Shown here in pieces: positions 12 through 46,441 of a stretch of DNA of 64,000 nt (the stretch's first letter is position 1; the number at the start of each line of letters is the position of its first letter). The notes below the pieces were generated by a model. It had not been told where the DNA came from. It saw only the letters and a program-made list of their open reading frames with translations, and did no database searches. A program made the position numbers and the translations under genes. Where the stretch lies: positions 1-64,000 of the IMG/VR virus record IMGVR_UViG_2162886007_000107. One strand, given 5' to 3'.

Positions 12-851
12 TTAGTTAATGCAAAGGTTGTGGGTAACAATCCAGTCTTCTACTACAAACAACTTATCTTCACTGTCGATATTAATGCAGATCGTTTCAG
101 TCGGGTGTTCTTTAACGATGCCAACAATCTTTAAGCGACTTGCTGCAAATCTGGCAATGTCGTCTTGCTCGATGTCTCGATGTCTGGCAGTAACTACATA
201 ACCGTCTTCAACCTTTTGAAGATCAGCAATACCGCCAACACTCCATGCCAGGTGTTGGAAGTTAAGAGCACTTTGTTTGTGCTCGGTAATGTAGCGAACA
301 GTACCGTTGCTTGCTACGCAGCCTTCATTGGTGCGCATGGCTGTAGCAATAGCTCGACGGTCCTGGTAATGAAGTTCTTGTATTTCACGGTTAACAGTAT
401 GACGTTCGCCAATTAGCATCATGGCAATGTCTTTAACAAATTCATCGGCAATACGTTTCTCCGCACCACTGATCTCACCAACCAGAGGGATGGCGTATTC
501 GAACTCATTGAAGTGAGCAATGATGTCGGCGGTGGTAGTAACGTACGGAGCAACACTATTACCCTCGTATACTTCCCAAAGATGCAACGGATGACTTACA
601 GCCTCACGTCCGTCCTCAAAGATGAACTTGTAGCAGTCTGTGACGCCCTGTGGGATTACTTCGGTCACTGAGGCTATGTTACCCATAGGACCAATGACCT
701 TACTGCCCTCACGCAGTTCCTTTAAAGCTAGCCAACCGCCAGGTACTTTTACCTTTACGTTGTACGGCATGGCTTTACCCTTGCTAACCATATTAAGCTT
801 AGGTTCGTTATTAACCTTTAACCCTACCATGGATTTTAAGAGGTTGATCAT
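12..851 (-). CDS. Free-standing intein-like (Hint + degenerate LAGLIDADG) protein, class-3 type
   Basis: GK|AMP at the block A start, HLW in block B, block F Cys (TETICINID), IVTHN in block G; only 26 aa upstream and LCIN downstream; AGGA RBS before the ATG. Confidence 0.8.
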   Translation of the reverse strand: MINLLKSMVGLKVNNEPKLNMVSKGKAMPYNVKVKVPGGWLALKELREGSKVIGPMGNIASVTEVIPQGVTDCYKFIFEDGREAVSHPLHLWEVYEGNSVAPYVTTTADIIAHFNEFEYAIPLVGEISGAEKRIADEFVKDIAMMLIGERHTVNREIQELHYQDRRAIATAMRTNEGCVASNGTVRYITEHKQSALNFQHLAWSVGGIADLQKVEDGYVVTARHRDIEQDDIARFAASRLKIVGIVKEHPTETICINIDSEDKLFVVEDWIVTHNLCIN

Positions 852-1011
852 CGTTAATGTCCTACGGGGAAATTTAATGGTTTATCCATATTAATGTTGT
901 GGTGAAGCGCTACAGCGTTGTACAAAATTGATGCATTCATATTAATTCTTTTTGGTGCTGGAACATCGGCATTGAAACTATTCCCAAAAGCTCTACCACA
1001 AGGAAAGCAGC

Positions 1012-2610
1012 ATGTCTGAACAAGCCGATAAAAACATTGGTGAAGCGGTCGCAGAAACCGTTGCTCAGGATAACGAAGCAATTCGTGAAGTCTTGGGTAA
1101 GGATGATCCCTTTGTACAAGCATTGGACGTGAAAAACCGTCCGGTAATCGATGAGACCAAAAGCGGTCCTGTCTGTGGTTGCCCGGGCGTGATTCACGAG
1201 AATCCAGAATGCCAGTTGCCGGATGCAGCGGTGGTTGCATTGGCGGCTGCTAAAGACGTTAGCCTTGCTTTGGCTCAATACGAACACAATATGCCGGCAT
1301 ACTGGGTGAGCATGATGCGCTTGCCAGGCATGCAGTCGTTCTATCCGTTCCACGATCACAGTAAAACTGGCGATCTCGGCGGTCTGTCTCTGACCCGTGA
1401 TGACAGTCCTGAACAGGCTGCTTATCTGGAAGACTATCTGGACCCCAAGAATGTCGAACCGGCATTCAAGAAGTTCTGGTCGACCTTTATGCCAAACGCT
1501 CCACAAACCGGTGCGGTGTTCGTTTACTATGGCCTGGTCGGTGACACTGAGGTTGTTTACCTCCGTTATCAGCAGGATCATGTTCACCCAATGGAGTTCG
1601 TACTGCCTCGTGCTGAACTCACCTACTTCCTGCGTGGCTGGACTGAAGCGATCACCAGCGATCACATGCAGACTGAGATGGAAGACTGGTGCAAACATCC
1701 GACCGGGTACAAAGATCTCCAGAAGAAAGGCTACCGCTATAATGTGAGTGCCCTGGCTCTGGTTCTTCCTTTGAGCTACTTCTTCGCTGATGCCTTTGGC
1801 ATTAAAGAAGATCAGTTTGCAAACATGGTCAATGGTGATTTCAAGATTCTGGAAGACATCAAGAAAGAACTGTCCAATCGCTTCGACCGTTACGTTGCCG
1901 ATATCAGCCGCTTTGCCATCACCCTGAAGGACAAGGTCAAGTTCAAAGACCACAACCTGATGCTGGCGTTCAAGGGCACTGATGACTTCCGTGGTCTGGT
2001 TGTTTCCCTCGACAAGATCTATCCGAAGTTCCCTGAAGGCGGTCAGTACGAGTGTGGCGTCAATCCACTCAAACTGGAAGACTGGAAGACCGAGGGTGAT
2101 AACGTCAAGGTTGTTATCCGCAAGCTGATTCGCCTGTCGACGAAAGTCAACGACATGCTGAACAAGATGTACCGTGAACTGCCAAACAACAAATGGTGCG
2201 AAACCTGGTTGGATGGTTTGGTTCGTGAACGTCTGCTGGCTGCGAGCCACTTCCTGAAAGAGCTGTACCAGGCTAACCCTACTGACATCCGTCCATACGT
2301 GGAAGAGATGGCCAACAAGGTTCTGTCCGCTCTGAACGAACGTGGTGGCAACATCGGTCTCGATCTGACCAGCTGGGTCGTCTACCAGTACTTCGATAAC
2401 GGCAGTCCTCCTATCCCTGTGGTGGCGGAAGGTCTGAACTTCAAGCAAGAACTGTATAACCAGCACACCGAGCGTTTCATGGAAGTGCTGTATCAGTACC
2501 TGTTCCACGTGCGTAGCCCGTACATTCGTCCATACGTCCATAAGGTCGTAGCAGACAAGAATGACGGTATCCCTGTCGGCTCGATTCGTCCGGTCAACAA
2601 AGAAGAATAA
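1012..2610 (+). CDS. Hypothetical protein with tail-tube-like N-terminal peptide
   Basis: 532-aa ORF with AAGGA RBS and strong phage codon bias; residues 32-47 match tail tube residues 20-35. Confidence 0.85.
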   Translation: MSEQADKNIGEAVAETVAQDNEAIREVLGKDDPFVQALDVKNRPVIDETKSGPVCGCPGVIHENPECQLPDAAVVALAAAKDVSLALAQYEHNMPAYWVSMMRLPGMQSFYPFHDHSKTGDLGGLSLTRDDSPEQAAYLEDYLDPKNVEPAFKKFWSTFMPNAPQTGAVFVYYGLVGDTEVVYLRYQQDHVHPMEFVLPRAELTYFLRGWTEAITSDHMQTEMEDWCKHPTGYKDLQKKGYRYNVSALALVLPLSYFFADAFGIKEDQFANMVNGDFKILEDIKKELSNRFDRYVADISRFAITLKDKVKFKDHNLMLAFKGTDDFRGLVVSLDKIYPKFPEGGQYECGVNPLKLEDWKTEGDNVKVVIRKLIRLSTKVNDMLNKMYRELPNNKWCETWLDGLVRERLLAASHFLKELYQANPTDIRPYVEEMANKVLSALNERGGNIGLDLTSWVVYQYFDNGSPPIPVVAEGLNFKQELYNQHTERFMEVLYQYLFHVRSPYIRPYVHKVVADKNDGIPVGSIRPVNKEE

Positions 2611-9321: not shown

Positions 9322-9708
9322 ATGGTACCTGTACAAAATTCGAGCATTATTCTGGTAGTTGCAGATAGTGGGTTTGCCAATCTCTGTGACGATCCTAATG
9401 CATACGTCATTCGTTTGAAGAAGATTCTGGGCGAGCGTGCTTTGGATACGCTAACCATCATGACCGTAAGTGGTAAGTACGGTATCGGTCCCTTGGCTGA
9501 AGATATCAAAGTGGTCGAAGTGGACGACAAGAACAAAACCATGTTCAGTCAAACACTGGAAAACGTTTCTGGTATCTTCGATGAACTCCTGGCTATCACC
9601 AATACCACCCAGGACAACTTTATCAACGCTGCTAAAGAAGTAATGGGTAACGCGAGCAAGACCATTACCACCTTCGGCTATCCACGGAAAAAAGACAATG
9701 GCCGGTAA
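9322..9708 (+). CDS. Hypothetical protein
   Basis: ORF with AAGGGA RBS before ATG 9322; overlaps the start of the next gene. Confidence 0.7.
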   Translation: MVPVQNSSIILVVADSGFANLCDDPNAYVIRLKKILGERALDTLTIMTVSGKYGIGPLAEDIKVVEVDDKNKTMFSQTLENVSGIFDELLAITNTTQDNFINAAKEVMGNASKTITTFGYPRKKDNGR

Positions 9709-10381
9709 CAGAAAGGCCTTTGAAGCTTACGTGTTAGAGTTCATGGGAGCTTTAACCGAGGGTGGAGGCAACAAGATTATTTACGAACGTCTCTTTGCTA
9801 AGCTTAATGATAAGCAGATTGAAGAGATGGTCGTACGTATTGAGCAAGGTAGTCCGTTGAGTGTCTGGGTAAGTAACTGGAACAAGAAAGAGATGATCCA
9901 GTTCTCCAACATTCAGAAACTTGCCAAGAAGTACGGTATTCTGCTGGAGCAACGAATCATTGTTAAGGATCCTGAAACTGGGATTACTTCAATGTCTCCG
10001 TACAAAGCAACTGTTGGGACCATCCCGGTTCGTAAGCAACGGCAGATGCAGGTTACCAAGTTCTCTTATGCAATGCACGATTACGATATCGATGACTTGA
10101 CCGGTCAGGTAACTGGTGACAGTCGTAGTACCGGTATCAGTCAGCCTGAAATTACTGTACTACGAAACATGGGTCTGGAAACAATGGCCAATGAACTGTA
10201 CAACGTTAAGGGTGGTGATCTGGACGCATTGAAGGCTTACAAGAACAGCCTTATTACCACAGGTAGTGCAAACGTTAACGCAGCTCTGCGTAGCGGGACT
10301 ATTGCCAAGGTACTGAGCAGTGTTCACTTCCTGTTCCGTGGTCGTCATATCGACACGAACTTCAACAAGCGTTACGGGTAA
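9698..10381 (+). CDS. Virion RNA polymerase beta-like subunit, C-terminal piece (phiKZ gp149-like)
   Basis: DDLTGQVTGDSRSTGISQPEITVL resembles the RpoB C-terminal LTQQP..GQRFGEME region; synteny with UvsX. Confidence 0.7.
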   Translation: MAGNRKAFEAYVLEFMGALTEGGGNKIIYERLFAKLNDKQIEEMVVRIEQGSPLSVWVSNWNKKEMIQFSNIQKLAKKYGILLEQRIIVKDPETGITSMSPYKATVGTIPVRKQRQMQVTKFSYAMHDYDIDDLTGQVTGDSRSTGISQPEITVLRNMGLETMANELYNVKGGDLDALKAYKNSLITTGSANVNAALRSGTIAKVLSSVHFLFRGRHIDTNFNKRYG

Positions 10382-16986: not shown

Positions 16987-19900
16987 TTACCGAACAGGGA
17001 CAGCTTTTGGAGCGGTCGTACTCTTCTTGTTAAGTTCTTCCAACTGAGCAACCTGCTGAGCAGCGATCTGGGCTTGAGTACCACCCGTCTCTCTGATCGC
17101 ATTAACAATTTTCTCAGCCAAGCCATCCAGGTCGATAAGAGGTCCCGGTGCAGCATTTGGGTTGGACCTAGTATCTACTGGTTGTGGTTTAGGCGTGAGT
17201 TTAGGATTGTCCTGGCCGATCTTTTGGAACGTGCCTGGATCAGTATCCATTTGAGGGTTGTTAGTTGAACCACCTTTACGATCAGGCAGAGGGACCGGAG
17301 TATAAGTCTTCTCTGGAGCATTAGCTTCCTCAGTACCACGAGGAACCGCTGCTTCTACTGGAACTTGCGGAGGAGCAGGAGGCTCAGGAGTGAGCTTCTG
17401 TTCTTGTTGTTGGACTGGACCACCACCAGTAGTAGTATCCTGACCATTTTCCGCATTACCACCTGCCGCTTGGTTGAACTTATTCGCAGCTTCTTCGTTT
17501 ACGAAACCGAAGTGGATGTGACCACCCGTTGCTCCAGCAGAAGCTCTCTTGTACTCGTTGAGCACCAGGAAGTCTTTAGGAGTCAAGCCTGCTTGTTGAG
17601 CCAGACCTTTCACGATAGCTACTGCGTAATCACTACTGGCTATTCCATTAGTCAGAGTGAAGTCAAGAGCAAGTCCTTTTGCGTGTTTGGAGTTAGGCTT
17701 CTTCTGCTTATGCCAAGCGTCGTTCAATGCAGTAAACTGTTTGAACGTCTTCACATTAGTCTGAATCAGCTGACACATACGTTTAATGCCAGAATGTACA
17801 TCACCCCCAGCCGTAGTCTCTGCACTCTTCAGACGCAGTCCGGAATTGTCACCAGTCCGGTTAAGAACCAATCCACCACCAGTAGTGTCGTAACCACCAG
17901 ATGGATCTCCACCACCAGTACCACCATTAGCTCCGCTAATAGCGCCACTACCATACCAACCACCAGGAGCGCTGTTATTAGGGGTACCGTATTGGCTACC
18001 ACCACCAGGCGCTGGAGAAAGAGGAGGCATAGATGGAGCACCTCCACCGTACATCCCAGCAGAACCACCGCCACCACTAGAAGTAGCGCTTGGTGAACCT
18101 ACTGAATCCTTGGATGCATCGACACCACTTTCTTCATCAGCTTTCAGAGTTCCTTTACTGAGCTGATCGAGATAGCTTAGGTACAGCTTGTAGCGATCCT
18201 GCATTCCTGGTAGTTCGTTACCTCCGTTCAGACCACGGGCAGAGTATCCAAAATCACCCTTATCGGTGATGGATTGTAACTGCTTCGAGTTCTTAAAGAA
18301 GTTAACTGCAACAGCAGCCATTACGTTAGGGTCTTCACCCAGTTTCTCTGGATTGTTAACCAGATCCACTCCGATCTCACGACCAGTCTTCTCGTAATTA
18401 GCCTTACCAGTCAGTTGGACAAAACCACGTCCACGATACAGGTAGCCATCCCCTGGAGCCAAGTTACCCAGGGACTTCCCTTTAGCACCGCCGTATACAG
18501 CGTTCCCAATTGCTACTTCCCCTCCTGCAACCAAAGCACGAGCCTGATCCAGACTAGTAACTTCCCTGAAGAGTTTCATCAACCGGGTAGGGTCGGTGTA
18601 TTTAAGGTTTTCGACTGTCTTGGAATAACCACCAGTTTCGTAGTTAGTGAGCGCAAGCATTTCTGCAATTGCTCGTGGGTCAGTAAAGCCTTGTTTCAGC
18701 ATCTCACGAATGATCAACTGTTCGGCCAACTTCCGCGGTACCTTAACGCCGGTATCCTTACCTTCGTTACGTTGGACATTCGACATATCCAAGTGACTGG
18801 TATCAGAATCCCCAGTCAATGCCTTGTAACCAAACTGGTTACTAGGAGTACCGTAAACCCCGTTCAAGGTGTACAGGTTACCTGTACCTGCACCTCTTGC
18901 TACGTTAGTTCCGTATTGACCGCCGGCAAGCATGTCTCTACGGCTCTTGTACTGGTCAGCTGTCTGGACGTTTGCGTAGTGAGGAGTATAACCACCACCA
19001 GTTTTGTGCGGGGAGATCGAGTCTGCCCAAGCCTTGGTATTGGTCTTCCCAGCTTCCTTCTCTGGATCTCTGAGTTTGGCTACAGTAGAAGCCTCACCCA
19101 GCATCTTCACCATACGGTCCACTTTATCTGGTTTACCCGGAGAGCTAGTCCCTTCAAAAGGAGAAGCCCGTACGTTCCAGATAGGAGTGATGATTGAATC
19201 GGTAATCTTCGCCTTGGTCTCTACCAGCCCCTTAGCGATCTCAAAGCGAGCAGTAGCGCTCAGGGACTTCCAGACAACACCTGGTTGACCTTTGCGATAG
19301 TTGTTCACCAAGAGCACGTAGTTACTCATTACAGGAGCGAACCTGTCACGGAACCAGCGGCACCATTCATCACCATCCCCGTCCTTCAGACGGAACGCAT
19401 CTTTAAAGAGGCCAAACAGATCGCCAATCTGTCCTTTGAAGACCACCTCTTTACCGTTGAACACAAACAACGACTCGCAGTAGCGTTCCAGTTTCAGAAC
19501 AGCTTCCACACGCCAATGCACATCATCTTCGTTACCATAGCAGGCCAAACGAATCGCCGTAAGGAGACTCACCGCACCTTCATCTGGTAACAGATCTTTG
19601 ATGTAAATGGCAGAGACTTGAGGACCAATTTTGAAGTTGGAATTAAGGTCTTTCAACCGACCATTAATATCATCCAACTCTACCTTGGCTTTGAACCTTT
19701 GGTCACCGGTCATCCCGGAGTCGTAAGGCTGAGCCAATTGTTTCTCAAGCACTTCTTTTCTGGCAGCGAGAGCCACGGCACCTTTCGGAAGATCAATGCC
19801 TTGTTTCTCAGAGTCAGGAGTCTTTTTGTCGATGAACTTCTTCAGTTCTTCCAGATAGTTGTTAACCCGAATGACCGTGTCTTTCTGAGCAAGGATCGGA

Positions 19901-22900
19901 ACAGACTTATCGATCTTCGCCACAATCGAGTAGGGGTAAGGAGCTACACTACTCAATGTGTTGTGCGTCTGGGACGCGACACGGTAAACGTTCTGACTGG
20001 TAGCCTTGTCGTATTCCTCAAGACTACTGATCTTCACGGTGTCGAGGCAAGCCATGTAGGTCAAGAAGACCGGCTTGAAACGACCATTGAACCAGGAGAA
20101 GACGTTAGCAAGCTTAGCCTTATCCTTAGGGTCATCCACAAACAGTCGGAGCACATCGGCCAACGGAGCATCCTTAGACAACGATGCACGACCGTTACCG
20201 ATTACTACAAACTTGGTTAATGCTTTCTCAGCATTAAGAACCTTCTCGGCAAGATCACTCTCTACGTCAGAAATACCGTATTGAGTAAGACGCAGTTTTA
20301 CCTGTGTGCCTTCACCTGCTTTATACAACCTGTACAGACCGTAACCTACAGCACCTACAGCAAGTGCACCGAGAACAAACGGACTAGACAGCAAAGCAAG
20401 TGCACCAGTACCCAACCAAGCAGCACCAGTAAGCAATGCACTACCGGTAGCGGCAGCAGCGGTGCCAGCGACGGCACTCAGTTCAAGACCTGCCAAACCA
20501 GCAGCAGCCGAAGCCAACTGATAACCACCGTAAACAGTAGCGGCTGTGTCAACTGCACCCATTACCGAACTAGTGAGATCTCCATCCTCAACTAACCCCG
20601 ATTCTTGCAGGCTAGCTAGCGCGGTGCCGGTTGCCATGGAAACACCAGCAGCCAAACCGAATTTCTTCAGCTTAGTACCAGGCTTCTTCCGGTGCTCTGC
20701 GCGATCTTCCTTACGTTTCTTCCGAACCTCTGGATGTTCATCCTTATTATCCAGAATGGTATCCATGATGCTACCACCAGCTGCAGTCAGACTCTTGGTC
20801 TTCATGAGGGTAAAGATACCCTTGGCAATAGCGGTAATACCTGTGGTCATCAGGGGCAGGGCCTTGAGACCCAATTGAGCAAACCAGATAACTGGCTTAA
20901 TACCAGACCAAAGTGTCTTGGTGAAGAATGTTCCAATACCAGCAATGGCACTGAAGATCATCCCGAAGATTCCTTTCTTCTCTGGTTTCTCGTTGTTCCC
21001 CATCTTCCCTGTAATAGCTTCGCCAATCTTGATGATGGCTTCGTCACGTTTGTCGTGCTTCTTCTCCTTCTTCTTCTCTTCCTGATCAGCGAGGGAGTTG
21101 AGACGGGAATCCTTCCCATTAACGTGTTCGAGTACTTTTCTGCTGAAGTCGTCTGTACGGTTGTGGTTGTCCACACCGCTGTTAGCCCGCTCTTGTTCCT
21201 TGCGTGCTTCTACGACTTCCTCAGGGGCCTTAGCAGCCACATCTGGGTTAATGCCCTTGTTGTGTTCAGGAGTGGCGGTAACTGCTTCCAGTTCACTGGT
21301 TTCTGGCATCAGTTTGTAACCCCAATGATCCAGCAACAAGTGGTAGATGCGGTCGATCGAGTTGGTGATTGGACTGTAGTCAGCCTTCATCATTGAAGCG
21401 CCTTTATCAAAGGCCTTGCCGCCATACTCAATCGCCTTTTGACGGGCAACCCCCAACTTATCCCACAGCCAACCAGCCGCTTTCTTAGTAGCAGAATTAA
21501 GCTTGTTGATACTTACACCCATCGAAGTAGTCAGACCACGATCGTACTCTTCTTGGGTAATAAGGACATTCCCTTCTCGGTCATAAACCGGACCATCGAT
21601 TTCATTCCAACCATTCAGCGCAACAGGCTGACCATCTTTGCCTTTCTTGTAGTAAGCGCCTCCTGCGAAGCTCTTACCGTACAAGGTAGGTTCGGATGAC
21701 CCTTCCTTATAAACGTTCATCTGATAGAAACGATCAGCGACACGTTTACCCATCGCTTTAAGACGACGAGTTGGATCAAGCCAATCCCAGGCTTTACCAA
21801 TCCATTCGCGCACCTTGTTCAGCCCACCAAGAATTACTTCCTTGTTCTCAGCAGTAAACAGTTTTCCTGCCAGACGTTTTGCACCAATAATCGCACCGTT
21901 GGTTTTATCCACGACACTGTTCTTGATGTCAGCCCAGCTTTCGATAACCTTATCTGTAACCGCATCGTAGTAGTCGCCACGCTTACGTTTCCAGACTTCC
22001 AGAATAGGACTATTAGAATCGGCCTCATAGAGGTCTTCCTCATCCTCAGCCAGCTTAGCCTTAGCCATACCGCGAAGCTTAAGGTAAGAAGCAGCAGCCA
22101 AACCACCACCAGCTACCAACATGGCCGTCTTCGGATCATGCAATGCAACACCGGCCAGACCGCCCAACAAGCCGCCCAAGATGAGAGGTTCGTTACGCAG
22201 GACAGTATCGACGGACTTATTGAAGAACTCCTTGAAGGAGAACTGTTTAATCCGATCAATGATCTTGTCTTTACCCGAGCGCATATCCTGTTCTTCTTCC
22301 TTGGACATCTTCTTGCGAGCAGGAAGACGTTCGTGGATAGCGGTCAGTGTTTGGTTACGGGCATTAGCCAGACGCAATAGATCCGAAGTATCCTTAACCA
22401 GCAGGTCAAGACTACTGTTAACCGGGGTAAGGTCCAAGTTCTTAAGCGATTCCAATCCTTGGAAAGTACTACCAGCAGACTTAAGGCTGTCGGCAATGTC
22501 TTTAATACCGTCGAGGCGTTTGAAGGCTTCGTCAATACCAACGATCTTGACCGGAACAGGGTTACTGTCACTTGGAGCATTGGCGTTAGCACCAGATGCA
22601 GCGACAATAGGACCAACGTACGGAGGAATCTTCAACCCACCAGCACCTGGACCCATACCACGGGTTGGGTAGTCTGGAGTATCTGGAGCAGCATCCATTG
22701 TCTGCTTGCGATCAGGGTTCTTCAGATAGTCCTTGAGGATCTTGTCAATGAGTCCTTCATTGATCTCGTCCGTGTTACCGTACTTGCTCTTGGTGATGAT
22801 ACCGGCTTCACGCATTGCATCGTAATAACCGTTGGCTTTGTACAGGTCGATCTTGTCAGACAAGTCGGTCCCGAACATTGACAGGGAGTTAGATGCTTCA

Positions 22901-24903
22901 GCGTATTGAGTCAGTTTAGACCGAGCTTTCTCACCCTTCATGTAGGTAAGCATCTTGGCCTTAGTAACTTCGTCTGCTTCGGAGAACTTTTCAAGATCCT
23001 CTTCAGAGATGTTGAAGTTAATCATCATCATCTTGCGAATAGCTTCAGCAGTTTTAGCGTCGTGACCCTCAGCCTTCAGATCCATGAAGTTGTAAGGGTT
23101 GAAGCCCAGGTCTTTGTCAGCATCCTTAATAAGCTGGAATGCCAAAGCCTGTTTGTGTGCTTTGGAAAGAGCGTTGCCCTCATCAATGTGTCCAGCCAGG
23201 CTTAGCGCTTGGTTGGCTTGAGTAGAGAACTCGCCGCGACCCAGGATGTTGTTTGTTACTTTCACCAACCGTTGTTTCGAGTTGATGAACTGAGCCTTGG
23301 TATAGTCGTAGGACAATGGCTTGATGTCGTCATTGCCTGTACGGAACTTTTCAAAGCTTTGATGAAGCAAGCTGAACCAACGAGGGATCTCCTCATTCAG
23401 CGTACGTTCAGAACGGCGAGTCCATAGGGACTGTTCGTGGCCGTCTTCCAGAGTACGTTGTTGCATCTGGTAAGTCGAGCCATTAGAAGCCCACATGTTT
23501 TCAAGCACCGCACCTGCAACCTTGTTACCGGTTTTACGGGCAGCCTTGAGAACAACCCATTGAGCCTTAGGCATTGGCTTAGCGTCAGGTGCCAGGGTCG
23601 TAAGGTAATCGTCGTAAGTACTGAAGTCATCGAAGCCAGTACCACCGGTGTAATGCTTAGCCAGTGTGTTGACGATCTGTTCACCATTGTTGGTGACGTA
23701 GCTTGCCACGTTGCCCAAGTCTTCAAGACGCTTGTAGGCATTTTCAGCCCATTTGCTCAGATCAGGGAAACGTTTCTTGAACGCAGCAACGAGTGCTTTA
23801 CCTTTACCGCTCTCCATGGCTTTGGGAAGCTGATTAAGGAAGATACCGGCAGCAGCGTTACCCATGAGACTACCTACGTTGATAGGCATCCCTTCAGTCA
23901 TCTCAGCAACCATACGCAGGCTGCTGGTAACGTCTTGGATAGTGCTCATGGTTTCATTACGAGCGTCAGCCCCAAGTTTATCGTTCAGGAATTCACTGAA
24001 GCCACCGAACTTGCTCTTAACCGTACTGAATACCGACTCACGAATACTTTTACGCATTGCCTGGCTATGCGTGGTTTTCTCGTAGTCCGACATCTGCGAG
24101 TACTTATTAATAGCCCGCAGTTCTGTGATGGTCCGATGTTGAGCCGCTTCCTGGAACTTAAAGAAGGCAGCAGAGGTCAGGTGATGACGAGCAGTAATGT
24201 TGATCAGCAGCGAATCGTTCCGCTGTTGCACACGACGCTGGTAATCGAGCAAGTGTTCCAAGAGCTGGTTGGTACGAACGGTAGCCTGAACAACAGAGTG
24301 CATACTGGCGATCTGACGACCACCAATCTCTGTCATCATGGATACTTGTTCTTTACCTACCGCCTTAAAGGTTTCCCGAGTAAGTGCTCCGTTGGCGTTT
24401 TCCGAGTTGATCAGACTGCTGACTTCTTCGTCAGAAGTTTGTTTCATCTGCTCGTCATTGTCACCAGAATGACTAGAAGCTTCCCAGTCAGAAAAGTCCC
24501 GAGTAGAGAACTCAGTGAGGGCTTCCGGGATTTTATTAGGAACCTTCCCGGTAATAGCTCCGGCTGCCCGCTTAGCCAAATATTGAAGGTCCTGAACAGT
24601 TTCGTAGCTACCTTCTTGGAGTTCCCGCATGATCTCGTGACGACGTTGGTCAAAGTCACGGAGACTACGGAAAGTAGGTGCCCAGGTGCCCGGGAGAACG
24701 CGCTGGAGCGTTCTTATCTTTGCATCGGTGCTACCGGCAGTCCTTTCAACCAGGCCGTCCAGAAAGCCGCTGGTGAAGCTGCTGAAGAAACCCTTCTTTC
24801 CACCGGGATTGTCGAAATCCATATCGAAGCCCATGTCGCCTTCAAACGGATCTGGTCCCCAGTCGCTGAAGTCTGACATGTCTTCAAAATCATTATCACT
24901 CAT
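16987..24903 (-). CDS. Tape-measure / tail-associated peptidoglycan hydrolase (phiKZ gp181 position) with GH19 and M15-like peptidase domains
   Basis: ~2640 aa, helical with hydrophobic Gly/Ala segments; GH19 motifs YETGG and GDGYLYRGRGFVQLTGKANY; SKHAKGLALDF...GHIHF zinc-peptidase motif; divergent from the RNAP genes. Confidence 0.85.
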   Translation of the reverse strand: MSDNDFEDMSDFSDWGPDPFEGDMGFDMDFDNPGGKKGFFSSFTSGFLDGLVERTAGSTDAKIRTLQRVLPGTWAPTFRSLRDFDQRRHEIMRELQEGSYETVQDLQYLAKRAAGAITGKVPNKIPEALTEFSTRDFSDWEASSHSGDNDEQMKQTSDEEVSSLINSENANGALTRETFKAVGKEQVSMMTEIGGRQIASMHSVVQATVRTNQLLEHLLDYQRRVQQRNDSLLINITARHHLTSAAFFKFQEAAQHRTITELRAINKYSQMSDYEKTTHSQAMRKSIRESVFSTVKSKFGGFSEFLNDKLGADARNETMSTIQDVTSSLRMVAEMTEGMPINVGSLMGNAAAGIFLNQLPKAMESGKGKALVAAFKKRFPDLSKWAENAYKRLEDLGNVASYVTNNGEQIVNTLAKHYTGGTGFDDFSTYDDYLTTLAPDAKPMPKAQWVVLKAARKTGNKVAGAVLENMWASNGSTYQMQQRTLEDGHEQSLWTRRSERTLNEEIPRWFSLLHQSFEKFRTGNDDIKPLSYDYTKAQFINSKQRLVKVTNNILGRGEFSTQANQALSLAGHIDEGNALSKAHKQALAFQLIKDADKDLGFNPYNFMDLKAEGHDAKTAEAIRKMMMINFNISEEDLEKFSEADEVTKAKMLTYMKGEKARSKLTQYAEASNSLSMFGTDLSDKIDLYKANGYYDAMREAGIITKSKYGNTDEINEGLIDKILKDYLKNPDRKQTMDAAPDTPDYPTRGMGPGAGGLKIPPYVGPIVAASGANANAPSDSNPVPVKIVGIDEAFKRLDGIKDIADSLKSAGSTFQGLESLKNLDLTPVNSSLDLLVKDTSDLLRLANARNQTLTAIHERLPARKKMSKEEEQDMRSGKDKIIDRIKQFSFKEFFNKSVDTVLRNEPLILGGLLGGLAGVALHDPKTAMLVAGGGLAAASYLKLRGMAKAKLAEDEEDLYEADSNSPILEVWKRKRGDYYDAVTDKVIESWADIKNSVVDKTNGAIIGAKRLAGKLFTAENKEVILGGLNKVREWIGKAWDWLDPTRRLKAMGKRVADRFYQMNVYKEGSSEPTLYGKSFAGGAYYKKGKDGQPVALNGWNEIDGPVYDREGNVLITQEEYDRGLTTSMGVSINKLNSATKKAAGWLWDKLGVARQKAIEYGGKAFDKGASMMKADYSPITNSIDRIYHLLLDHWGYKLMPETSELEAVTATPEHNKGINPDVAAKAPEEVVEARKEQERANSGVDNHNRTDDFSRKVLEHVNGKDSRLNSLADQEEKKKEKKHDKRDEAIIKIGEAITGKMGNNEKPEKKGIFGMIFSAIAGIGTFFTKTLWSGIKPVIWFAQLGLKALPLMTTGITAIAKGIFTLMKTKSLTAAGGSIMDTILDNKDEHPEVRKKRKEDRAEHRKKPGTKLKKFGLAAGVSMATGTALASLQESGLVEDGDLTSSVMGAVDTAATVYGGYQLASAAAGLAGLELSAVAGTAAAATGSALLTGAAWLGTGALALLSSPFVLGALAVGAVGYGLYRLYKAGEGTQVKLRLTQYGISDVESDLAEKVLNAEKALTKFVVIGNGRASLSKDAPLADVLRLFVDDPKDKAKLANVFSWFNGRFKPVFLTYMACLDTVKISSLEEYDKATSQNVYRVASQTHNTLSSVAPYPYSIVAKIDKSVPILAQKDTVIRVNNYLEELKKFIDKKTPDSEKQGIDLPKGAVALAARKEVLEKQLAQPYDSGMTGDQRFKAKVELDDINGRLKDLNSNFKIGPQVSAIYIKDLLPDEGAVSLLTAIRLACYGNEDDVHWRVEAVLKLERYCESLFVFNGKEVVFKGQIGDLFGLFKDAFRLKDGDGDEWCRWFRDRFAPVMSNYVLLVNNYRKGQPGVVWKSLSATARFEIAKGLVETKAKITDSIITPIWNVRASPFEGTSSPGKPDKVDRMVKMLGEASTVAKLRDPEKEAGKTNTKAWADSISPHKTGGGYTPHYANVQTADQYKSRRDMLAGGQYGTNVARGAGTGNLYTLNGVYGTPSNQFGYKALTGDSDTSHLDMSNVQRNEGKDTGVKVPRKLAEQLIIREMLKQGFTDPRAIAEMLALTNYETGGYSKTVENLKYTDPTRLMKLFREVTSLDQARALVAGGEVAIGNAVYGGAKGKSLGNLAPGDGYLYRGRGFVQLTGKANYEKTGREIGVDLVNNPEKLGEDPNVMAAVAVNFFKNSKQLQSITDKGDFGYSARGLNGGNELPGMQDRYKLYLSYLDQLSKGTLKADEESGVDASKDSVGSPSATSSGGGGSAGMYGGGAPSMPPLSPAPGGGSQYGTPNNSAPGGWYGSGAISGANGGTGGGDPSGGYDTTGGGLVLNRTGDNSGLRLKSAETTAGGDVHSGIKRMCQLIQTNVKTFKQFTALNDAWHKQKKPNSKHAKGLALDFTLTNGIASSDYAVAIVKGLAQQAGLTPKDFLVLNEYKRASAGATGGHIHFGFVNEEAANKFNQAAGGNAENGQDTTTGGGPVQQQEQKLTPEPPAPPQVPVEAAVPRGTEEANAPEKTYTPVPLPDRKGGSTNNPQMDTDPGTFQKIGQDNPKLTPKPQPVDTRSNPNAAPGPLIDLDGLAEKIVNAIRETGGTQAQIAAQQVAQLEELNKKSTTAPKAVPVR

Positions 24904-24929
24904 TACCACACTCCTAGTGAGCTTAAGCC

Positions 24930-26555
24930 ATGAAGCCTAGTAACTTAACCCTGTTAGATCCCAGGACGATTGTCCCTGGGATCTACAAACCTGTTACGTC
25001 TACTGACGCTTTCGAGGGCATGACACAGAACCTTAACGAACTGGGTCTCTACTCCCCTGAAATCTTCGGCAAGATGGGTACCAAAGAAAGGGATAGCACC
25101 GAAGCCTACATCGATGTAAAATTGCCTATCTTTAACCCGACCTACTTAAAAGCGTTAGGGCAAATAAAATCTTTGTACCTTGGGATTCTCAAAGGTTCGG
25201 AATACGCCGTATGGGACGATAAGTCCAAGGATTTCATAAAATCCAACATCATCGACGGCGAGACCGGCTTTAGTTTCTTTAATCGTCACTTCCTGGAATT
25301 GGTAGTAACGACTACCGACTCGCAAATGCGGAAGATCCGGGTTAAAGCTGTTAATATGTTCCGTCACATTGCCCTGACTGATAAGGTCTTGGTTATCCCA
25401 GCTGGGATGCGTGACATTCAGTTTATGCCAAACGGTTCTGTCAGTGAACCCGAGATGACCGAGTACTACCGCAAACTCATGTTCCGTACTGGGGTTGTTG
25501 CAATCGGTAGTAAGGAAGACAAAGAAAACCCAATGTACGACAACGTGCGCTGGGGTCTGCAATCTTCCTTTAATGACATCGACGAATACATCTTTGGTCT
25601 GCAAGGTGGTAAAGGCGGTATTCTCCAACGCCGGATGTCTACTCGTGGTGTTGTCGGCGGTACTCGTAACGTTATTACTGCACGACGTGTTAGCCGTAGC
25701 AACCTCTTTGAGGATGATGGTGTAAACCCTAACAGTGTGGACATGGGTCTGATGCAGGCCATGATGAACTACAGCTTTGTCTGTATTCACGCCATGACCA
25801 CTAAGTACCTGGAAGGGATCTTTACCATTGGTTCGCAAACAGCCAAACTGGTTAACTCCAAGACACTCGAATTTGAGTACGTGGAGATCCTGCCAGCGAC
25901 TGTGGACAAGTGGACTACTGCTACTGGCCTTACCAAACTGTTTAACGGTTTCTCTAACGTTAACCTGCGCAGCAAGCCTATCGTTATCAGCGGCCATTAT
26001 CTGGCTTTGATTTATGACGACGGTAAAGAAGTTATAGTTCTCAACGATATCAACGACCTACCAGAAGGGCGCGACAAGAAGCTGGTAACTCCTATCACGT
26101 ATATGGAGTTGTTCTACTTGTCCTGTCAGGAAGCGATCCGTCGGCAAATGAGCCAGCAGACTCGTTACCCTATTACTGGTTTGGGTTCCATCTTCCCGGC
26201 TAACGTTAACCTGCTGACTACAGTAGGTGCTAAGCCACGGATCTTGATGGAGATCGATGGGAGTGTAATTGGTACGTTGCCAAGGTTCCCTCTTAAAGTT
26301 GGTAAGGTCGATTACTTTGATGCAATGAGTATTGACCCGACTCGTGAAGCACTGGCAGGTTCTGACCACGATGGTGACGCCCTCAACAGTAACTCGTTGT
26401 GTGGCGAAGACTCCAAAGCAGAAGTCAAGGACTTGTTCGGCAAACGCGAGTATTACATCAGCGGTAGTGGTCAGTTCCTTTATGACCCTGTCAACGAGCC
26501 CGCAATGTTTGCACTGAAAGCCATGACCAGTGGCTTAAGGAAGCGTAATAAATGA
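24930..26555 (+). CDS. Virion RNA polymerase beta'-like subunit (phiKZ gp180-like)
   Basis: GLYSPEIFG, VIPAGMRD, GGKGG, RNVIT, TRYP and catalytic DxDGD (SDHDGD). Confidence 0.9.
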   Translation: MKPSNLTLLDPRTIVPGIYKPVTSTDAFEGMTQNLNELGLYSPEIFGKMGTKERDSTEAYIDVKLPIFNPTYLKALGQIKSLYLGILKGSEYAVWDDKSKDFIKSNIIDGETGFSFFNRHFLELVVTTTDSQMRKIRVKAVNMFRHIALTDKVLVIPAGMRDIQFMPNGSVSEPEMTEYYRKLMFRTGVVAIGSKEDKENPMYDNVRWGLQSSFNDIDEYIFGLQGGKGGILQRRMSTRGVVGGTRNVITARRVSRSNLFEDDGVNPNSVDMGLMQAMMNYSFVCIHAMTTKYLEGIFTIGSQTAKLVNSKTLEFEYVEILPATVDKWTTATGLTKLFNGFSNVNLRSKPIVISGHYLALIYDDGKEVIVLNDINDLPEGRDKKLVTPITYMELFYLSCQEAIRRQMSQQTRYPITGLGSIFPANVNLLTTVGAKPRILMEIDGSVIGTLPRFPLKVGKVDYFDAMSIDPTREALAGSDHDGDALNSNSLCGEDSKAEVKDLFGKREYYISGSGQFLYDPVNEPAMFALKAMTSGLRKRNK

Positions 26556-43281: not shown

Positions 43282-43306
43282 GAATCTGCATATGTGCAGA
43301 CATAAC

Positions 43307-43341
43307 CCTACCCCTACTCCCACTAAGGGAGTAGGGGTAGG
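43307..43341. terminator. 15-bp perfect hairpin between convergent genes
   Basis: CCTACCCCTACTCCC-actaa-GGGAGTAGGGGTAGG. Confidence 0.75.
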
Positions 43342-43366: not shown

Positions 43367-44266
43367 TTAACCGAGGTAGCTTGGGTTATCCACGCGGACC
43401 GCTTGCTCAACCATGCGCTCGATGTTACCCGCTTGCGAGTTTTCAACGATAGCAGTACGCTGAGTGAAGCCGATCGGAGCAGTGGTTGCATCCGGGTTGT
43501 GAAGAGGCATCAGCTTCAACATCTGACGTGCAATCTCGATCACCGCATAGGTGTCGAATTCGATAACGCCAGTGAACTCCATGGCGATGTCACGGATGAC
43601 GTTATCTTCGTCTTTGTTGCGCTTCAGATCGATCTTCACGTTCTGAGTTGGCTGGCCACCAACCAGGATTGCGGCGTGCGCAATGTCCCGGAAGTTGCGA
43701 GTCGGCTCGAAGTAGATAGCCGAGTAACCAGTTTCGTCCAACATCATGTCACCCGGATCGTCCAGAATCACCATCTTGGCGTTCAGGATTTCGGCGTCCA
43801 TCACCAGCCACTGTTGCCATACCTTGAACATCTTGGTGAATGGTTCACCTTCAACGTCATAACCGGTGTGGGTCACAGCACCGAGGGTACGCTGAGCGCC
43901 CACGGCGATGGCCATCCGGTGACCAGTCCAACGCATGTCTGCGAAGTTGATCACGGTTTGATCGGAGAGACCCTCGAAGATCCGCGTACGGTTTTCGAGG
44001 AACGATTTGCACAGGGAGTGCAGCTGGTCACCAGCAGGCAGGCGCGAGAACCCAGCAGGGGTGCTGAGCACGATACACCATGCTTGTTGGGAGACGTGTG
44101 GCTGAGTGGAGACGTAATCGAATACGTTACCAGCCCAGCCGTACTGACCGCCCCGTACGGGGTTGATAACCGGACGGTTACCAATGTCCATTGCCTGGAC
44201 AAATGGGTCGCTCTGTGGGAGCAACGTTTCACTGTCGCGATGCGGCAGGTTAGTATCAGAAGCCAT
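43367..44266 (-). CDS. Tail tube protein (phiKZ gp30-like)
   Basis: 299 aa directly downstream of the sheath gene; very strong codon bias. Confidence 0.8.
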   Translation of the reverse strand: MASDTNLPHRDSETLLPQSDPFVQAMDIGNRPVINPVRGGQYGWAGNVFDYVSTQPHVSQQAWCIVLSTPAGFSRLPAGDQLHSLCKSFLENRTRIFEGLSDQTVINFADMRWTGHRMAIAVGAQRTLGAVTHTGYDVEGEPFTKMFKVWQQWLVMDAEILNAKMVILDDPGDMMLDETGYSAIYFEPTRNFRDIAHAAILVGGQPTQNVKIDLKRNKDEDNVIRDIAMEFTGVIEFDTYAVIEIARQMLKLMPLHNPDATTAPIGFTQRTAIVENSQAGNIERMVEQAVRVDNPSYLG

Positions 44267-44281
44267 GACTTCCTATCTCCC

Positions 44282-46441
44282 TTAGTTGGTGCCCAGTTCT
44301 TCTTCGTTGTGAGCGAAGAGGTCCATGGTCATCATGTATTTAGCCTTGTTGAAGTAGGCGTGTACTTGGGTCTGCATGATAGCTTTGCTACCAACAGTGC
44401 CTTCGAAGTAGCCAGGTTCAACGCGAATGTTGCGAGCCAGAGCACCCACACGGTCACGGCACTCACGTTCTGCGCGGTCCTTGAACAGCGAGACGTAGTT
44501 GTTGGCCGAGTAGTTGGTGTCACCGCACACGTAGTTCCAGCAGTCCTGGCAGATCTTCTCGATGCATACGCAAATGAAGTTCGTGATCAGATCCTTGAGG
44601 ACGGAGTCCACGTTGGAGTAGATCGTTACCAGAGCAGGACGGAACAGACGATCGCCGGAGTCGTACGGACGCAGTGTGATGCAACCACGTTCGAAGTTGT
44701 CGGCGCTTTGCACGTCGCTCTCGAACTCGATGTTCGGAGAGTGCATGGTGCGCAGGATGCGGTTGTCCGCATGACCAGGAGACTTCGATGGGACGATAAC
44801 GCCCTGATCGTTACCAGCGAACTGGGCAAAGGCATAAGCCAAGTCCAGGTTACCGGAGAAGTAATCACCAGTCAACTCGTCGATTGCCAGAGCTTCAATC
44901 AGGTTGATCGACGCACGGCAGGACGGGGTACCCCAGTATTCCGATTCAGGGTACATGCGGGTCATGTTGTTCAGCTGAACCGAACGCGAGTAGACCTGCG
45001 CCAGGGCGTTAGCCTTGGACGGCTCGTAGATGGTGGCGCAAGGCATCACGATGATGTCCTTACGGGCAGCCAGCAGACGGATAGCAGTGTCCTTCACGTC
45101 CTGCGAGTAGCCGACGTCCCAGAAAACCGACTGGCGGTTACGGGTAACGTTGGACTGCTCGATGCCGGAGACGTAACCTTCCATGTCTTCAGCGATCAGG
45201 GCGTTGTTGATCTGCCACGCCTCACCACGAGTCAACGGCTGCTCGGCATCACCCAACAGGTTGAACGGGTCATCCACAGGCTCACGTACCAGATAGTCTG
45301 GCAGTTTGCCTTCGTTGTCGTAGAACGGATTGATACCGCCCGATGCCTTGACCGCGTAGGTCATGTCCCAGGTGGTGGTATCTTTCACGGTCACCGCGTA
45401 GTACGGGATACCGGAATGGTTCTGAGCAGTGAACGGGTTCATCTGCTTGTACGGACGTACGTTCAGAACTTCAACCAGGCTGGTGTTGTTCGGCTTCTCT
45501 ACAGCGTAGAGGGCCTGGCACAGCGCGTCGATCGACTGCTGGTACACATGAACACCAGAGTACGGAGCAGGGATCGGAACAACCTTACGGTTGGCGTTGG
45601 TACCGGTGTACTCACCGAAGGCCAGCTTCAGGTTGTAGCGAGTGCTCAGATACAGGGTATCGAACAGAGTCGCTTCAACGCTTTCACGACCACGCTGGGT
45701 TTTGGCATAAATGCGCTTACCAGCTTTGTTGTCGCGGAAGGTCTTCAGGTTAAAAGGGAAGACGCCGGTCGCTTTCACGAACTTGGCAACTTCGCCGAAC
45801 TGGAACGCGGTTGGAGAAACACCGAAGTTCATGCCGGAGTCGTTGTAAAGGTCGCCCACGCCCGCCATGCCGTCGTAGATCGGGAACACTTCAGTGACAG
45901 GGTCATCTTCAGTGGCACCAGCAATCGAACGGCGAGTCAGATTACCGACCGCTTTGGTTTTCGCGTCTGGGTCGAGTTTGATCTCGATGCTCAGGCCGTC
46001 GAATTCCTTACCAGGAACCGGGATCTTGTTGCCATCCTGGTCACGGACGAAGTTACCGGCCATGTCACGTTCGAAATCCGGAACCTTGATTTTCTGTACG
46101 AAGGCCGAAACGGCAGTACGTGCCATTGCGTTGTTCGCAGACAGACGACGGATACCAACCGAAGCCTGACCGCCAGCGATGAGCCGTTGGATCAGAACAG
46201 AGGTTGGGCCGTAGTAGGACGAGTCCGGATCATTGATGTCGCCGAATACAGCAGCGATGTCTTTGGTCTGGAGCCAAACAGTACCCACTTCACTGGCCAG
46301 TTTGCCTTTAGGGAAGACCCCATGGATTACTGGGCAGTGCAGTGGACGTGTAACCTGGACGGGGGTGTATTCCGGGATCGAATCGTCTTTGATCCCCCGG
46401 TTATCCACCTTACCAGGGATGATACTGGTGAGAGAAGTCAT
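44282..46441 (-). CDS. Tail sheath protein (phiKZ gp29-like)
   Basis: 719 aa; PLHCP, FWDVGY and YPESEYWGTP; divergent from the structural/terminase operon. Confidence 0.85.
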   Translation of the reverse strand: MTSLTSIIPGKVDNRGIKDDSIPEYTPVQVTRPLHCPVIHGVFPKGKLASEVGTVWLQTKDIAAVFGDINDPDSSYYGPTSVLIQRLIAGGQASVGIRRLSANNAMARTAVSAFVQKIKVPDFERDMAGNFVRDQDGNKIPVPGKEFDGLSIEIKLDPDAKTKAVGNLTRRSIAGATEDDPVTEVFPIYDGMAGVGDLYNDSGMNFGVSPTAFQFGEVAKFVKATGVFPFNLKTFRDNKAGKRIYAKTQRGRESVEATLFDTLYLSTRYNLKLAFGEYTGTNANRKVVPIPAPYSGVHVYQQSIDALCQALYAVEKPNNTSLVEVLNVRPYKQMNPFTAQNHSGIPYYAVTVKDTTTWDMTYAVKASGGINPFYDNEGKLPDYLVREPVDDPFNLLGDAEQPLTRGEAWQINNALIAEDMEGYVSGIEQSNVTRNRQSVFWDVGYSQDVKDTAIRLLAARKDIIVMPCATIYEPSKANALAQVYSRSVQLNNMTRMYPESEYWGTPSCRASINLIEALAIDELTGDYFSGNLDLAYAFAQFAGNDQGVIVPSKSPGHADNRILRTMHSPNIEFESDVQSADNFERGCITLRPYDSGDRLFRPALVTIYSNVDSVLKDLITNFICVCIEKICQDCWNYVCGDTNYSANNYVSLFKDRAERECRDRVGALARNIRVEPGYFEGTVGSKAIMQTQVHAYFNKAKYMMTMDLFAHNEEELGTN

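What the first reader, a model, noticed from the sequence alone, without database searches (positions are those of the whole stretch)
1105..1152. Orphan protein carries a conserved copy of the tail-tube N-terminal peptide
Seen: DPFVQALDVKNRPVID (aa 32-47 of ORF 1012-2610) matches DPFVQAMDIGNRPVIN (aa 20-35 of the tail tube, nt 44209-44162) at 12 of 16 residues. Five of the 12 identical residues use different synonymous codons, which points to selection on the peptide rather than a recent DNA copy. No other similarity between the two proteins is visible, and the genes are 43 kb apart. Inference: structural mimicry. It could dock this protein into the tail or a tube chaperone, poison tail assembly of competing phages, or decoy a tube-sensing defence system (DSR2 is known to be triggered by tail tube protein).
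Basis: partly seen in the sequence, partly recalled or inferred. Interest (0 to 1): 0.82.

Follow-up and report, generated by a model that had tools for sequence, protein, structure and literature searches.

The report
Tail-tube arm copied into another protein
An uncharacterised but conserved jumbo-phage protein carries, in its floppy N-terminal extension, a diverged copy of the arm that tail-tube subunits use to grip their neighbour in the ring, so it probably docks on tube subunits, although no function has been shown.

Summary
ORF 1012-2610 (+) and the tail tube (43367-44266, -) share 12 of 16 residues, with 5 synonymous codon differences. It is the only such pair among 990 protein pairs in the window; all others share at most 9 of 16.

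- The protein is not an orphan. It is the positional orthologue of phage EL gp167 and RisingSun gp212, a family with at least 51 clusters at 50% identity. No Pfam family matches, and the fold has no PDB match.
- The similarity is not just a 16-mer. In orthologues it extends to about 45 residues in two blocks, split by a 40-60 residue insertion. This points to homology with the tube's N-terminal arm.

The first block is the best conserved part of the N-terminal extension: 53% pairwise identity against 16-20% in the flanks and 37% in the core. Synonymous sites are scrambled, so selection acts on the peptide.

Three published jumbo-phage tail structures show the tube's N-terminal domain reaching to the neighbouring subunit in the same ring. 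My best explanation, which is inferred and not shown, is that the copied arm docks the protein onto the arm-acceptor site of unassembled tube subunits, as an assembly chaperone or regulator. Cultured relatives (EL, RisingSun, Miami, FishSpeaker) lack the module.

The parts
1012..2610 (+). ORF 1012, 532 aa. Member of an uncharacterised chimallivirus family (phrog_23926) and positional orthologue of EL gp167 and RisingSun gp212.
   Evidence: PHROG E 1.4e-38. tblastn hits to EL-like and RisingSun/Joad phages. The gene order helicase | ORF | DUF7194 | gp157-like virion protein is conserved. An AAGGA ribosome-binding site lies at 1000-1004, 7 nt before the ATG.
1012..1401 (+). Lineage-specific N-terminal extension (aa 1-130). 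Flexible and low-complexity, absent from EL gp167 and RisingSun gp212.
   Evidence: Alignments. AF2 pLDDT is 40-83 here against more than 90 in the core.
1090..1167 (+). Block 1 of the tube-arm copy (aa 27-52).
   Evidence: BLASTP. Profile hits. Pairwise identity among lineages is 53%, against 16-20% in the flanks. Predicted as a short helix (aa 33-38) plus a strand (aa 46), matching the tube.
1273..1317 (+). Decayed remnant of block 2 (aa 88-102). It aligns with the W-AGNV-EY...VS block of orthologues and with tube aa 41-58.
   Evidence: Clade alignment. Two-piece profile hits in orthologues. Not significant in the window's copy on its own.
1429..2589 (+). Conserved core domain (aa 140-526). 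Alpha/beta fold with no known relative outside this family.
   Evidence: AF2 pLDDT mostly above 90. Foldseek finds no PDB match with E <= 0.001. BFVD hits only EL, RisingSun, Miami and Special G uncharacterised proteins. No Pfam family.
43367..44266 (-). Tail tube protein, 299 aa.
   Evidence: Pfam PF23806 E 2.3e-94. Matches the PDB tube chains of Goslar and phiKZ gp30. Lies directly downstream of the sheath gene.
44099..44227 (-). The tube's N-terminal arm (aa 14-56), the source or homologue of the copied module. The motif core, aa 20-35, is nt 44162-44209.
   Evidence: Highly conserved in 58 tube homologues. AF2 predicts helix 21-26 and strand 33, with aa 36-56 below pLDDT 50 in the monomer. 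In the solved phiKp24, phiKZ and Goslar tubes the N-terminal domain reaches the neighbouring subunit of the same ring.
44282..46441 (-). Tail sheath, 719 aa. Listed as context only.
   Evidence: phrog_3242 E 1.7e-193 and Pfam phiKZ_gp29PR.

Best explanation
ORF 1012 belongs to a conserved, uncharacterised family of EL/RisingSun-type nucleus-forming jumbo phages. In this lineage a flexible N-terminal extension precedes the conserved core. That extension contains a diverged copy of the tail tube protein's N-terminal arm: a short amphipathic helix (PFVQAL) followed by an extended RPVI(D/N) segment. Orthologues also carry a second block, GG...WAGNV-EY.

In assembled tubes this arm reaches over to the neighbouring subunit of the same hexameric ring. 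My proposed mechanism is that the copied arm occupies the arm-acceptor site of a tube subunit that has not yet joined a ring, tethering the core domain to unassembled tube protein. The protein would then act as an assembly chaperone or timing factor, working by arm complementation.

Shown here:
- the shared peptide is real
- it extends to two blocks
- it is conserved at the protein level
- the family is conserved in sequence and gene order
- the predicted local structure matches in both proteins

Taken from the literature: the arm's natural partner is a neighbouring tube subunit.

Inferred only: the binding itself and what follows from it.
For: - The match is statistically unique in the window, in about 400 kb of related loci, and in an IMG/VR-wide scan for DPFVQA[LMIF]D. 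That scan returned only tubes, ORF orthologues and two unrelated chance hits.
- The tube N-terminal profile hits the orthologues in two pieces: L007 E 8.7e-10, L006 2.4e-9, P0076 5e-8, P0006 3e-7, P0065 1e-5, P0077 4e-5, P0002 3e-4.
- The motif is kept in orthologues that share only 32-60% overall identity, and in P0077, which lies in another clade of the family tree.
- Block 1 shows 53% pairwise identity, against 16-20% in the flanks and 37% in the core.
- Synonymous sites are randomised, so selection acts on the peptide.
- AF2 predicts the same helix-plus-strand in both proteins. The tube arm is disordered in the monomer, as expected for an element that orders only on a partner.
- Three structural papers state that the tube's N-terminal domain extends to or packs on the neighbouring protomer in the same layer: PMC9700779, PMC13250141 and PMC13742148.
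Against: - No binding data and no complex model were obtainable here.
- The module is missing from all cultured relatives examined (EL, RisingSun, Miami, FishSpeaker, Vibrio phage 2 TSL-2019). It is decayed in several lineages (P0004, P0066, P0073). It is therefore dispensable for the family's core role.
- Block 2 has decayed in the window's own copy.
- The gene sits among replication genes, 43 kb from the tail genes. No homologue is annotated as a virion protein. RisingSun gp212 was seen only marginally in a crude lysate.
- Co-variation with the cognate tube could not be tested, because the tube motif hardly varies in the motif-bearing phages.
Confidence: 0.4

Rival explanations
1. Relic of domain shuffling. 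An ancestral recombination fused about 50 codons of the tube gene's 5' end to this gene. The fragment now serves an internal structural role, for example packing on the protein's own core, and has nothing to do with the tube.
For: - The module is lost or decayed in many lineages, and block 2 has decayed in the window.
- ORF copies carry their own signature (DD-, -DV-, a D/N-E ending) and resemble each other (14/16) more than they resemble the tube (12-13/16).
- AF2 gives moderate confidence (pLDDT about 62-83) to aa 11-50 within the monomer model.
Against: A fragment with a new role would be expected to drift away from the tube sequence. Instead it stays 65-75% identical to the tube arm while the rest of the extension falls below 20% identity between lineages. 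P0077 keeps a near-consensus tube-type motif in an otherwise unrelated 265-residue extension.
Confidence: 0.25
2. Shared third partner. The arm is a recognition element for another factor that handles both proteins, such as a phage or host chaperone, or another assembly or sorting factor.
For: The segment is short, flexible and helix-plus-strand, which is typical of docking motifs. EL-type phages are known to encode a GroEL-like chaperonin, and one is annotated near the syntenic region of Aeromonas phage PS1.
Against: No such factor is known for jumbo-phage tubes. The solved structures already give the arm a defined partner, the neighbouring tube subunit. Nothing else in the window or in the fetched loci carries the motif.
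Confidence: 0.15
3. Weapon or decoy. The arm copy either poisons tube-ring closure in co-infecting related phages or soaks up a host immune sensor that recognises the tube protein.
For: Blocking of tail assembly is a known anti-phage strategy (Tab; PMC10884400). Bacterial sensors of tail-tube proteins have been described (PMC13581612 in the listing; DSR2 from my own knowledge). The distribution is patchy and the gene lies outside the tail module, as is common for accessory or conflict genes.
Against: - The copy is closest to the phage's own tube type, so a poison would hit self.
- The gene has a fixed syntenic position and a conserved core in many phages, unlike typical conflict islands.
- Known sensors recognise folded tube protein. 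I know of no case, from my own knowledge, where a 16-45 residue arm is the recognised element.
- No defence-related family was detected.
Confidence: 0.1
4. Chance or convergent similarity with no shared origin or function.
For: The match in the window alone is short (16-26 residues).
Against: It is unique among 990 protein pairs. Reciprocal profile hits exist, with no other hit better than E about 0.7. A second co-linear block appears in orthologues. The motif recurs across lineages.
Confidence: 0.02

Closest known systems
EL gp167 / RisingSun gp212 family (phrog_23926); structural relatives in Klebsiella phage Miami and Erwinia phage Special G
   Same: Same core domain (E 1.4e-38 to the PHROG; Foldseek E 1e-21 to the EL and RisingSun models). 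Same gene position between the DarB/RapA-like helicase gene and the DUF7194 gene.
   Different: The cultured members have no N-terminal extension and no tube-arm module. No member has a known function.
phiKZ-type tail tube protein (Pfam PF23806; phiKZ gp30, Goslar gp217, phiKp24 gp119)
   Same: Shares the N-terminal arm sequence, about 45 residues in two blocks, with the same predicted helix-plus-strand.
   Different: No similarity beyond the arm. No Pfam match and no fold match to the solved tubes. It is not a tube paralogue.
Donor-strand complementation in chaperone-usher pili (PapD/FimC type). A comparison of mechanism only, from my own knowledge.
   Same: In concept, a non-structural protein supplies to an unassembled subunit the element that the next subunit's N-terminal extension would supply in the polymer.
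   Different: Unrelated proteins and folds. Here the element is an actual homologue of the subunit's arm. Binding has not been shown.
Tail assembly chaperones (lambda gpG/gpGT type), from my own knowledge and the Tab paper's description
   Same: Non-virion factors that bind major tail subunits and organise tube polymerisation (PMC10884400).
   Different: Those are small proteins encoded between the tube and tape-measure genes and made with a programmed frameshift. ORF 1012 is 532 aa, lies 43 kb from the tube gene and has no sequence resemblance to them.
Tab, the prophage tail assembly blocker (PMC10884400)
   Same: A protein that could interfere with tail assembly by binding a tail component.
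   Different: Tab is prophage-encoded, is linked to the tape-measure C-terminus and is paired with an anti-Tab. ORF 1012 is a syntenic gene of a jumbo phage of the lytic EL/phiKZ type.

Membership tests
phrog_23926 / EL gp167 - RisingSun gp212 family | Significant match of the core domain to the family profile | tested here: met
   PHROG E 1.4e-38 over aa 276-527. A profile search found 51 cluster representatives. Foldseek E 1.5e-21 and 3.1e-21 to the EL and RisingSun models.
phrog_23926 / EL gp167 - RisingSun gp212 family | Conserved genomic position: divergent from the helicase gene, convergent with DUF7194 and the gp157-like virion protein gene | tested here: met
phrog_23926 / EL gp167 - RisingSun gp212 family | Family-wide conserved residues: DH-L-L-F, G-LD-xxW-V/Y, RPY, C-terminal GSIR | tested here: met
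   Invariant columns D313, H314, G449, L450, D451, W455, R506, P507, Y508 and G523-R526.
phiKZ-type tail tube protein (PF23806) | Full-length match to the tube domain, or a tube beta-sandwich core | tested here: not met
   No Pfam hit. BLASTP similarity is confined to 26 residues. Foldseek against the PDB gives no hit with E <= 0.001 and no tube chain among the 50 listed matches. Goslar and phiKZ tube chains exist in the PDB sequence copy, but whether both are in the Foldseek library was not checked.
phiKZ-type tail tube protein (PF23806) | N-terminal arm (helix plus strand, then GG-YGWAGN) | tested here: met
   Profile hits in both directions. Same predicted secondary structure. Block 2 is clear only in orthologues.
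Tail assembly chaperone (gpG/GT type) | Encoded between the tube and tape-measure genes; small protein | tested here: not met
   ORF 1012 is 532 aa and lies 43 kb from the tube gene. The gp181-like giant tail protein is at 16987-24909.
Tail assembly chaperone (gpG/GT type) | Programmed -1 frameshift product | not tested
   No slippery-site analysis was done. The ORF is a single long frame.
Subunit-arm complementation chaperone (mechanistic class) | Carries the same element that the neighbouring subunit donates in the polymer | tested here: met
   The arm copy is shown. The arm's role in the ring comes from PMC9700779, PMC13250141 and PMC13742148.
Subunit-arm complementation chaperone (mechanistic class) | Binds the unassembled subunit at the acceptor site and is displaced on assembly | not testable with these tools
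   No multimer prediction and no experiment was available.
Tab-like tail assembly blocker or immune decoy | Sequence relation to Tab, or to known anti-defence or decoy proteins, and an accessory-island context | not tested
   No sequence comparison with Tab or DSAD1 was made. The context is a conserved syntenic position, not an island.

The most novel reading that the evidence does not exclude
ORF 1012-type proteins would be the first dedicated tube-subunit chaperones or assembly-timing factors of contractile-tail jumbo phages. They would work by arm complementation: a copied ring-closing arm caps the acceptor site of free tube monomers until the baseplate initiator displaces it. This would also give the first function to the EL gp167 / RisingSun gp212 family.
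Probability: 0.25. Interest if true: 0.7.

Novelty: new variant of a known kind. Interest (0 to 1): 0.55.

Why it matters
How phiKZ-type phages keep their abundant tube protein from polymerising away from the baseplate is not known to me, and I know of no tube chaperone identified for them. A conserved non-virion protein carrying the tube's own ring-closing arm is a concrete, testable candidate.

It also gives a first functional handle on a family that has no annotation. It is a clean example of a short interaction arm moving between genes and then being held by selection while everything around it diverges.

If instead the arm is used against competitors or host sensors, it would be a new type of conflict module. 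Because cultured relatives lack the module, it could only have been found in metagenomic genomes.

Tried and rejected
- **Homology to phiKZ internal head proteins.** I tested gp162 and gp163, the neighbours of DUF7194 in phiKZ. hhalign probability was below 1%, so this is rejected.
- **Known domains or folds for the protein.** Pfam gave nothing for the window protein or for 46 family members. PDB sequence hits were all E > 0.3. Foldseek against the PDB gave nothing at E <= 0.001. The ESM Atlas best score was 0.41, which is uninformative.
- **Other carriers of the motif among 5.8 billion proteins.** A region-restricted search with aa 20-60 found one candidate and no score, so it was uninformative. 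A first attempt failed on a parameter limit.
- **Co-variation of the ORF motif with the cognate tube.** I assembled five pairs: the window; P0002/P0008, paired only by matching contig length; L007/L013; L006/L014; L008/L015. A sixth pair is P0073/L025. The tube motif is almost invariant in these phages, so the test has no power.
- **Cultured-phage orthologues.** Miami, FishSpeaker, Vibrio phage 2 TSL-2019, RisingSun and EL all lack any tube-like module.
- **Recent DNA copy or gene conversion.** Rejected on codon comparisons.
- **A second conserved N-terminal island in other clades** (G-Y/F-x-G-T-x-E-E-W...PKEGY-V/I-E). It has no counterpart in any window protein.
- **Expression class.** The promoter and terminator scan around the gene gave nothing useful.
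- **Literature.** I found no paper on EL gp167. RisingSun gp212 appears only as a marginal identification in a crude lysate.

Full report
**1. Observation**

ORF 1012-2610 (+, 532 aa) and the ORF at 43367-44266 (-, 299 aa) are both present as described. The second is a phiKZ-type tail tube protein (Pfam PF23806, E 2.3e-94). It lies directly downstream of the sheath gene (phrog_3242), so the window comes from a phiKZ/EL-like jumbo phage. The window corresponds to the start of IMG/VR contig IMGVR_UViG_2162886007_000107, 236 kb.

The two 16-mers are at the stated coordinates: 12/16 identical residues, 35/48 identical nucleotides, and 5 of the 12 identical residues use different codons. BLASTP extends the match to 14/26 residues, with pairwise E 9e-7.

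**2. Is it more than chance?**

- For all 990 pairs of the window's 45 likely proteins, the best ungapped 16-mer identity is 5-9, except for this pair at 12.
- A profile of the N-termini of 58 tube homologues, run against all 412 six-frame ORFs of the window, finds only the tube and ORF 1012 (E 1.8e-5; next best 0.74).
- A profile of the orthologues' N-terminal regions, built without the window's sequence, finds only ORF 1012 and the tube (E 7e-6). The tube hit comes in two pieces, tube aa 16-43 and 41-56. The next best hit has E 2.5.
- In 3552 six-frame ORFs from all related loci fetched, the tube-arm profile hits only tubes and ORF 1012 orthologues.
- An IMG/VR-wide DNA scan for DPFVQA[L/M/I/F]D gave 14 loci: tubes, ORF orthologues and two unrelated chance hits.

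**3. The protein is not an orphan**

It matches phrog_23926 (E 1.4e-38). tblastn finds EL-like Pseudomonas phages and Erwinia phages RisingSun and Joad. With RisingSun gp212 as query, it also finds Miami-like Klebsiella phages, several Vibrio and Photobacterium phages, Stenotrophomonas phage BUCTxx100 and Shewanella phage FishSpeaker. All of these hits are annotated as hypothetical.

A profile search of 1.84 billion cluster representatives gave 51 members.

Gene order is conserved wherever I looked: a DarB/RapA-like helicase gene on the opposite strand, then this gene, then DUF7194 and a phiKZ gp157-like virion protein converging on it.

AF2 gives a confident model of the core, with aa 140-520 mostly above pLDDT 90. 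The fold has no significant match in the PDB. In BFVD it matches only uncharacterised proteins from other jumbo phages, including EL, RisingSun, Miami and Special G. No Pfam family matches any of 46 members. It is not related to phiKZ gp162 or gp163.

**4.

Closer orthologues also carry the motif. These are P0002 (60% identity), P0006, L006 and L007 (36-37%), L008 (32%), P0065 and P0076.

In L006, L007, P0006, P0065, P0076 and P0005, a second block follows after an insertion of 40-60 residues. It reads W-(A/T)-G-N-(V/I)-x-(E/D/N)-Y and continues into ...P-x-F-V-S-N. This is co-linear with the tube's GG-x-YGWAGNVFEY-VS-x-QPHVSQ.

The tube N-terminal profile accordingly hits these proteins in two pieces. 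L007 scores E 8.7e-10, L006 2.4e-9, P0076 5e-8 and P0006 3e-7.

About 45 residues of the tube's N-terminal arm are therefore homologous to two islands in this family's N-terminal extension. In the window's own copy only the first island is well preserved. The second, at about aa 88-102, has decayed.

**5. Selection**

Among seven lineages with an extension, block 1 shows 53% mean pairwise identity. The figures are 19.5% before it, 16.1% after it and 37.3% in the core.

Codons are scrambled:
- The window and L007 ORF motifs share 14/16 residues but only 7 identical codons.
- L007 and its own tube share 17/27 residues, 7 identical codons and 58% nucleotide identity.

This rules out a recent DNA copy or ongoing gene conversion. 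It shows purifying selection on the peptide.

**6. Distribution**

In a maximum-likelihood tree of the core domain, motif carriers make up most of the window's 12-member clade. There is decay in P0004, P0066 and P0067. P0003 shows no module, though its N-terminus may be miscalled.

P0077, a positional orthologue in a different, well-supported clade, carries a near-consensus motif (SDQFVQALALGERPVID). It sits at residue 205, just upstream of the core. P0070 and P0073 carry degenerate versions.

EL gp167 and RisingSun gp212 lack any N-terminal extension. The Miami, FishSpeaker and Vibrio phage 2 TSL-2019 homologues do have pre-core regions of varying length. None of the five carries the module, although their tubes keep their own arms.

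The module is therefore either ancestral to the larger clade and repeatedly lost, or it was acquired more than once. Either way it is accessory to the core. The ORF motif matches the EL/RisingSun type of tube arm. It does not match the divergent arms of Miami, Vibrio, Goslar or PhiPA3 tubes.

**7. What the arm does in the tube**

Three independent cryo-EM studies give the same description.
- phiKZ: the N-terminal domain extends toward a neighbouring gp30 within the same layer (PMC13250141).

AF2 on the window's tube predicts helix 21-26 and a strand residue at 33, and gives pLDDT below 50 for aa 36-56. That fits an arm that orders only on a partner. In ORF 1012 the equivalent residues are predicted as helix 33-38 and a strand residue at 46. 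They sit within a flexible extension.

**8. Mechanism**

The simplest reading is that the copied arm binds what the original arm binds, namely the acceptor surface on the central domain of a tube subunit. In a closed hexamer no such site is free, so the target would be unassembled tube protein or open ring intermediates.

That would make the protein a tube-subunit chaperone or assembly-timing factor, or an adaptor that brings its unknown core activity to tube protein. This step is inference. I could not run a complex prediction or any binding test.

Several facts argue against a strong claim:
- The module is dispensable in many relatives.
- The gene lies among replication-type genes (RNase H-like, UvsX-like, RNA polymerase subunits).
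- No homologue is annotated as a virion protein.
- RisingSun gp212 was only marginally detected in a crude lysate.

Rivals are:
- a shuffling relic with an internal role
- a shared third partner
- a competitor-poisoning or immune-decoy role
- chance, which is effectively excluded

**9. Comparison with known systems**

The protein is a member of the EL gp167 / RisingSun gp212 family. It is not a tube paralogue: only the arm is shared, and there is no Pfam or fold match.

Mechanistically, the nearest analogy is donor-strand complementation in chaperone-usher pili. There a chaperone supplies the element that the next subunit's N-terminal extension would supply.

It does not fit gpG/GT-type tail assembly chaperones in size or location. 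It does not fit Tab-like blockers either, which are prophage-encoded and linked to the tape-measure protein.

**10. Verdict**

This is a real, conserved and previously unremarked shared module with a plausible but unproven tube-docking role. I rate it of moderate interest. It would be a new variant of a known kind of mechanism, interaction-arm complementation or mimicry, set in an uncharacterised phage family.

Noticed in passing
window 12-851 (-): A free-standing 279-aa intein-like ORF ending ...VTHN-LCIN-stop. It is homologous (23% identity, E 7e-10) to the intein inside the terminase large subunit of the same window. It occupies the place where relatives have the 5' part of the DarB/RapA-like helicase gene. 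Same-sized ORFs sit at the same position in L003 and L004, each followed by a separate ORF of about 360 aa.
   Followed up: partly
window 51532-55158 (+): The terminase large subunit is 1208 aa. It carries an inserted intein at about aa 338-614, ending VTHN.
   Followed up: partly
window 1174-1212 (+), ORF 1012 aa 55-67: A Cys-x-Cys...His...Cys cluster (CGCPGVIHENPEC) lies just after the motif and is shared only with orthologue P0002. It could be a small metal-binding knuckle within the variable insertion.
   Followed up: no
window 937-2541 (-) and 43235-46447 (+): Two very long antisense ORFs (534 aa and 1070 aa) lie opposite ORF 1012 and opposite the tube and sheath genes. I treat them as artefacts because the sense strands carry the homologues and family matches. 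I did not search the antisense translations.
   Followed up: partly
P0070 aa 45-90, P0077 aa 83-130, P0078 aa 27-72, P0082 aa 31-73 (family members outside the window): Other clades of the family share a different conserved island in their N-terminal extensions (G-Y/F-x-G-T-x-E-E-W...PKEGY-V/I-E). It has no counterpart in any window protein. Its origin is unknown.
   Followed up: partly
L003 9613-10008, L004 9637-10008, L043 2721-2984: In several relatives a small ORF (87-131 aa) lies just upstream of the ORF 1012 orthologue, overlapping its start in L003 and L004. The window has only a 160-nt intergenic region here (852-1011).
   Followed up: no
window 16987-24909 (-): A 2640-aa protein matches phrog_3201 (labelled 'tail fiber protein') over nearly its whole length, with a lysozyme/endolysin-like domain at aa 2068-2257. 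From my own knowledge I read it as the counterpart of the phiKZ gp181-type giant tail protein; I did not test this.
   Followed up: no
window 9698-10381, 24930-26555, 26552-30952 (+): Several split RNA polymerase beta/beta'-like subunit genes are present, consistent with the multisubunit RNA polymerases of nucleus-forming jumbo phages.
   Followed up: no
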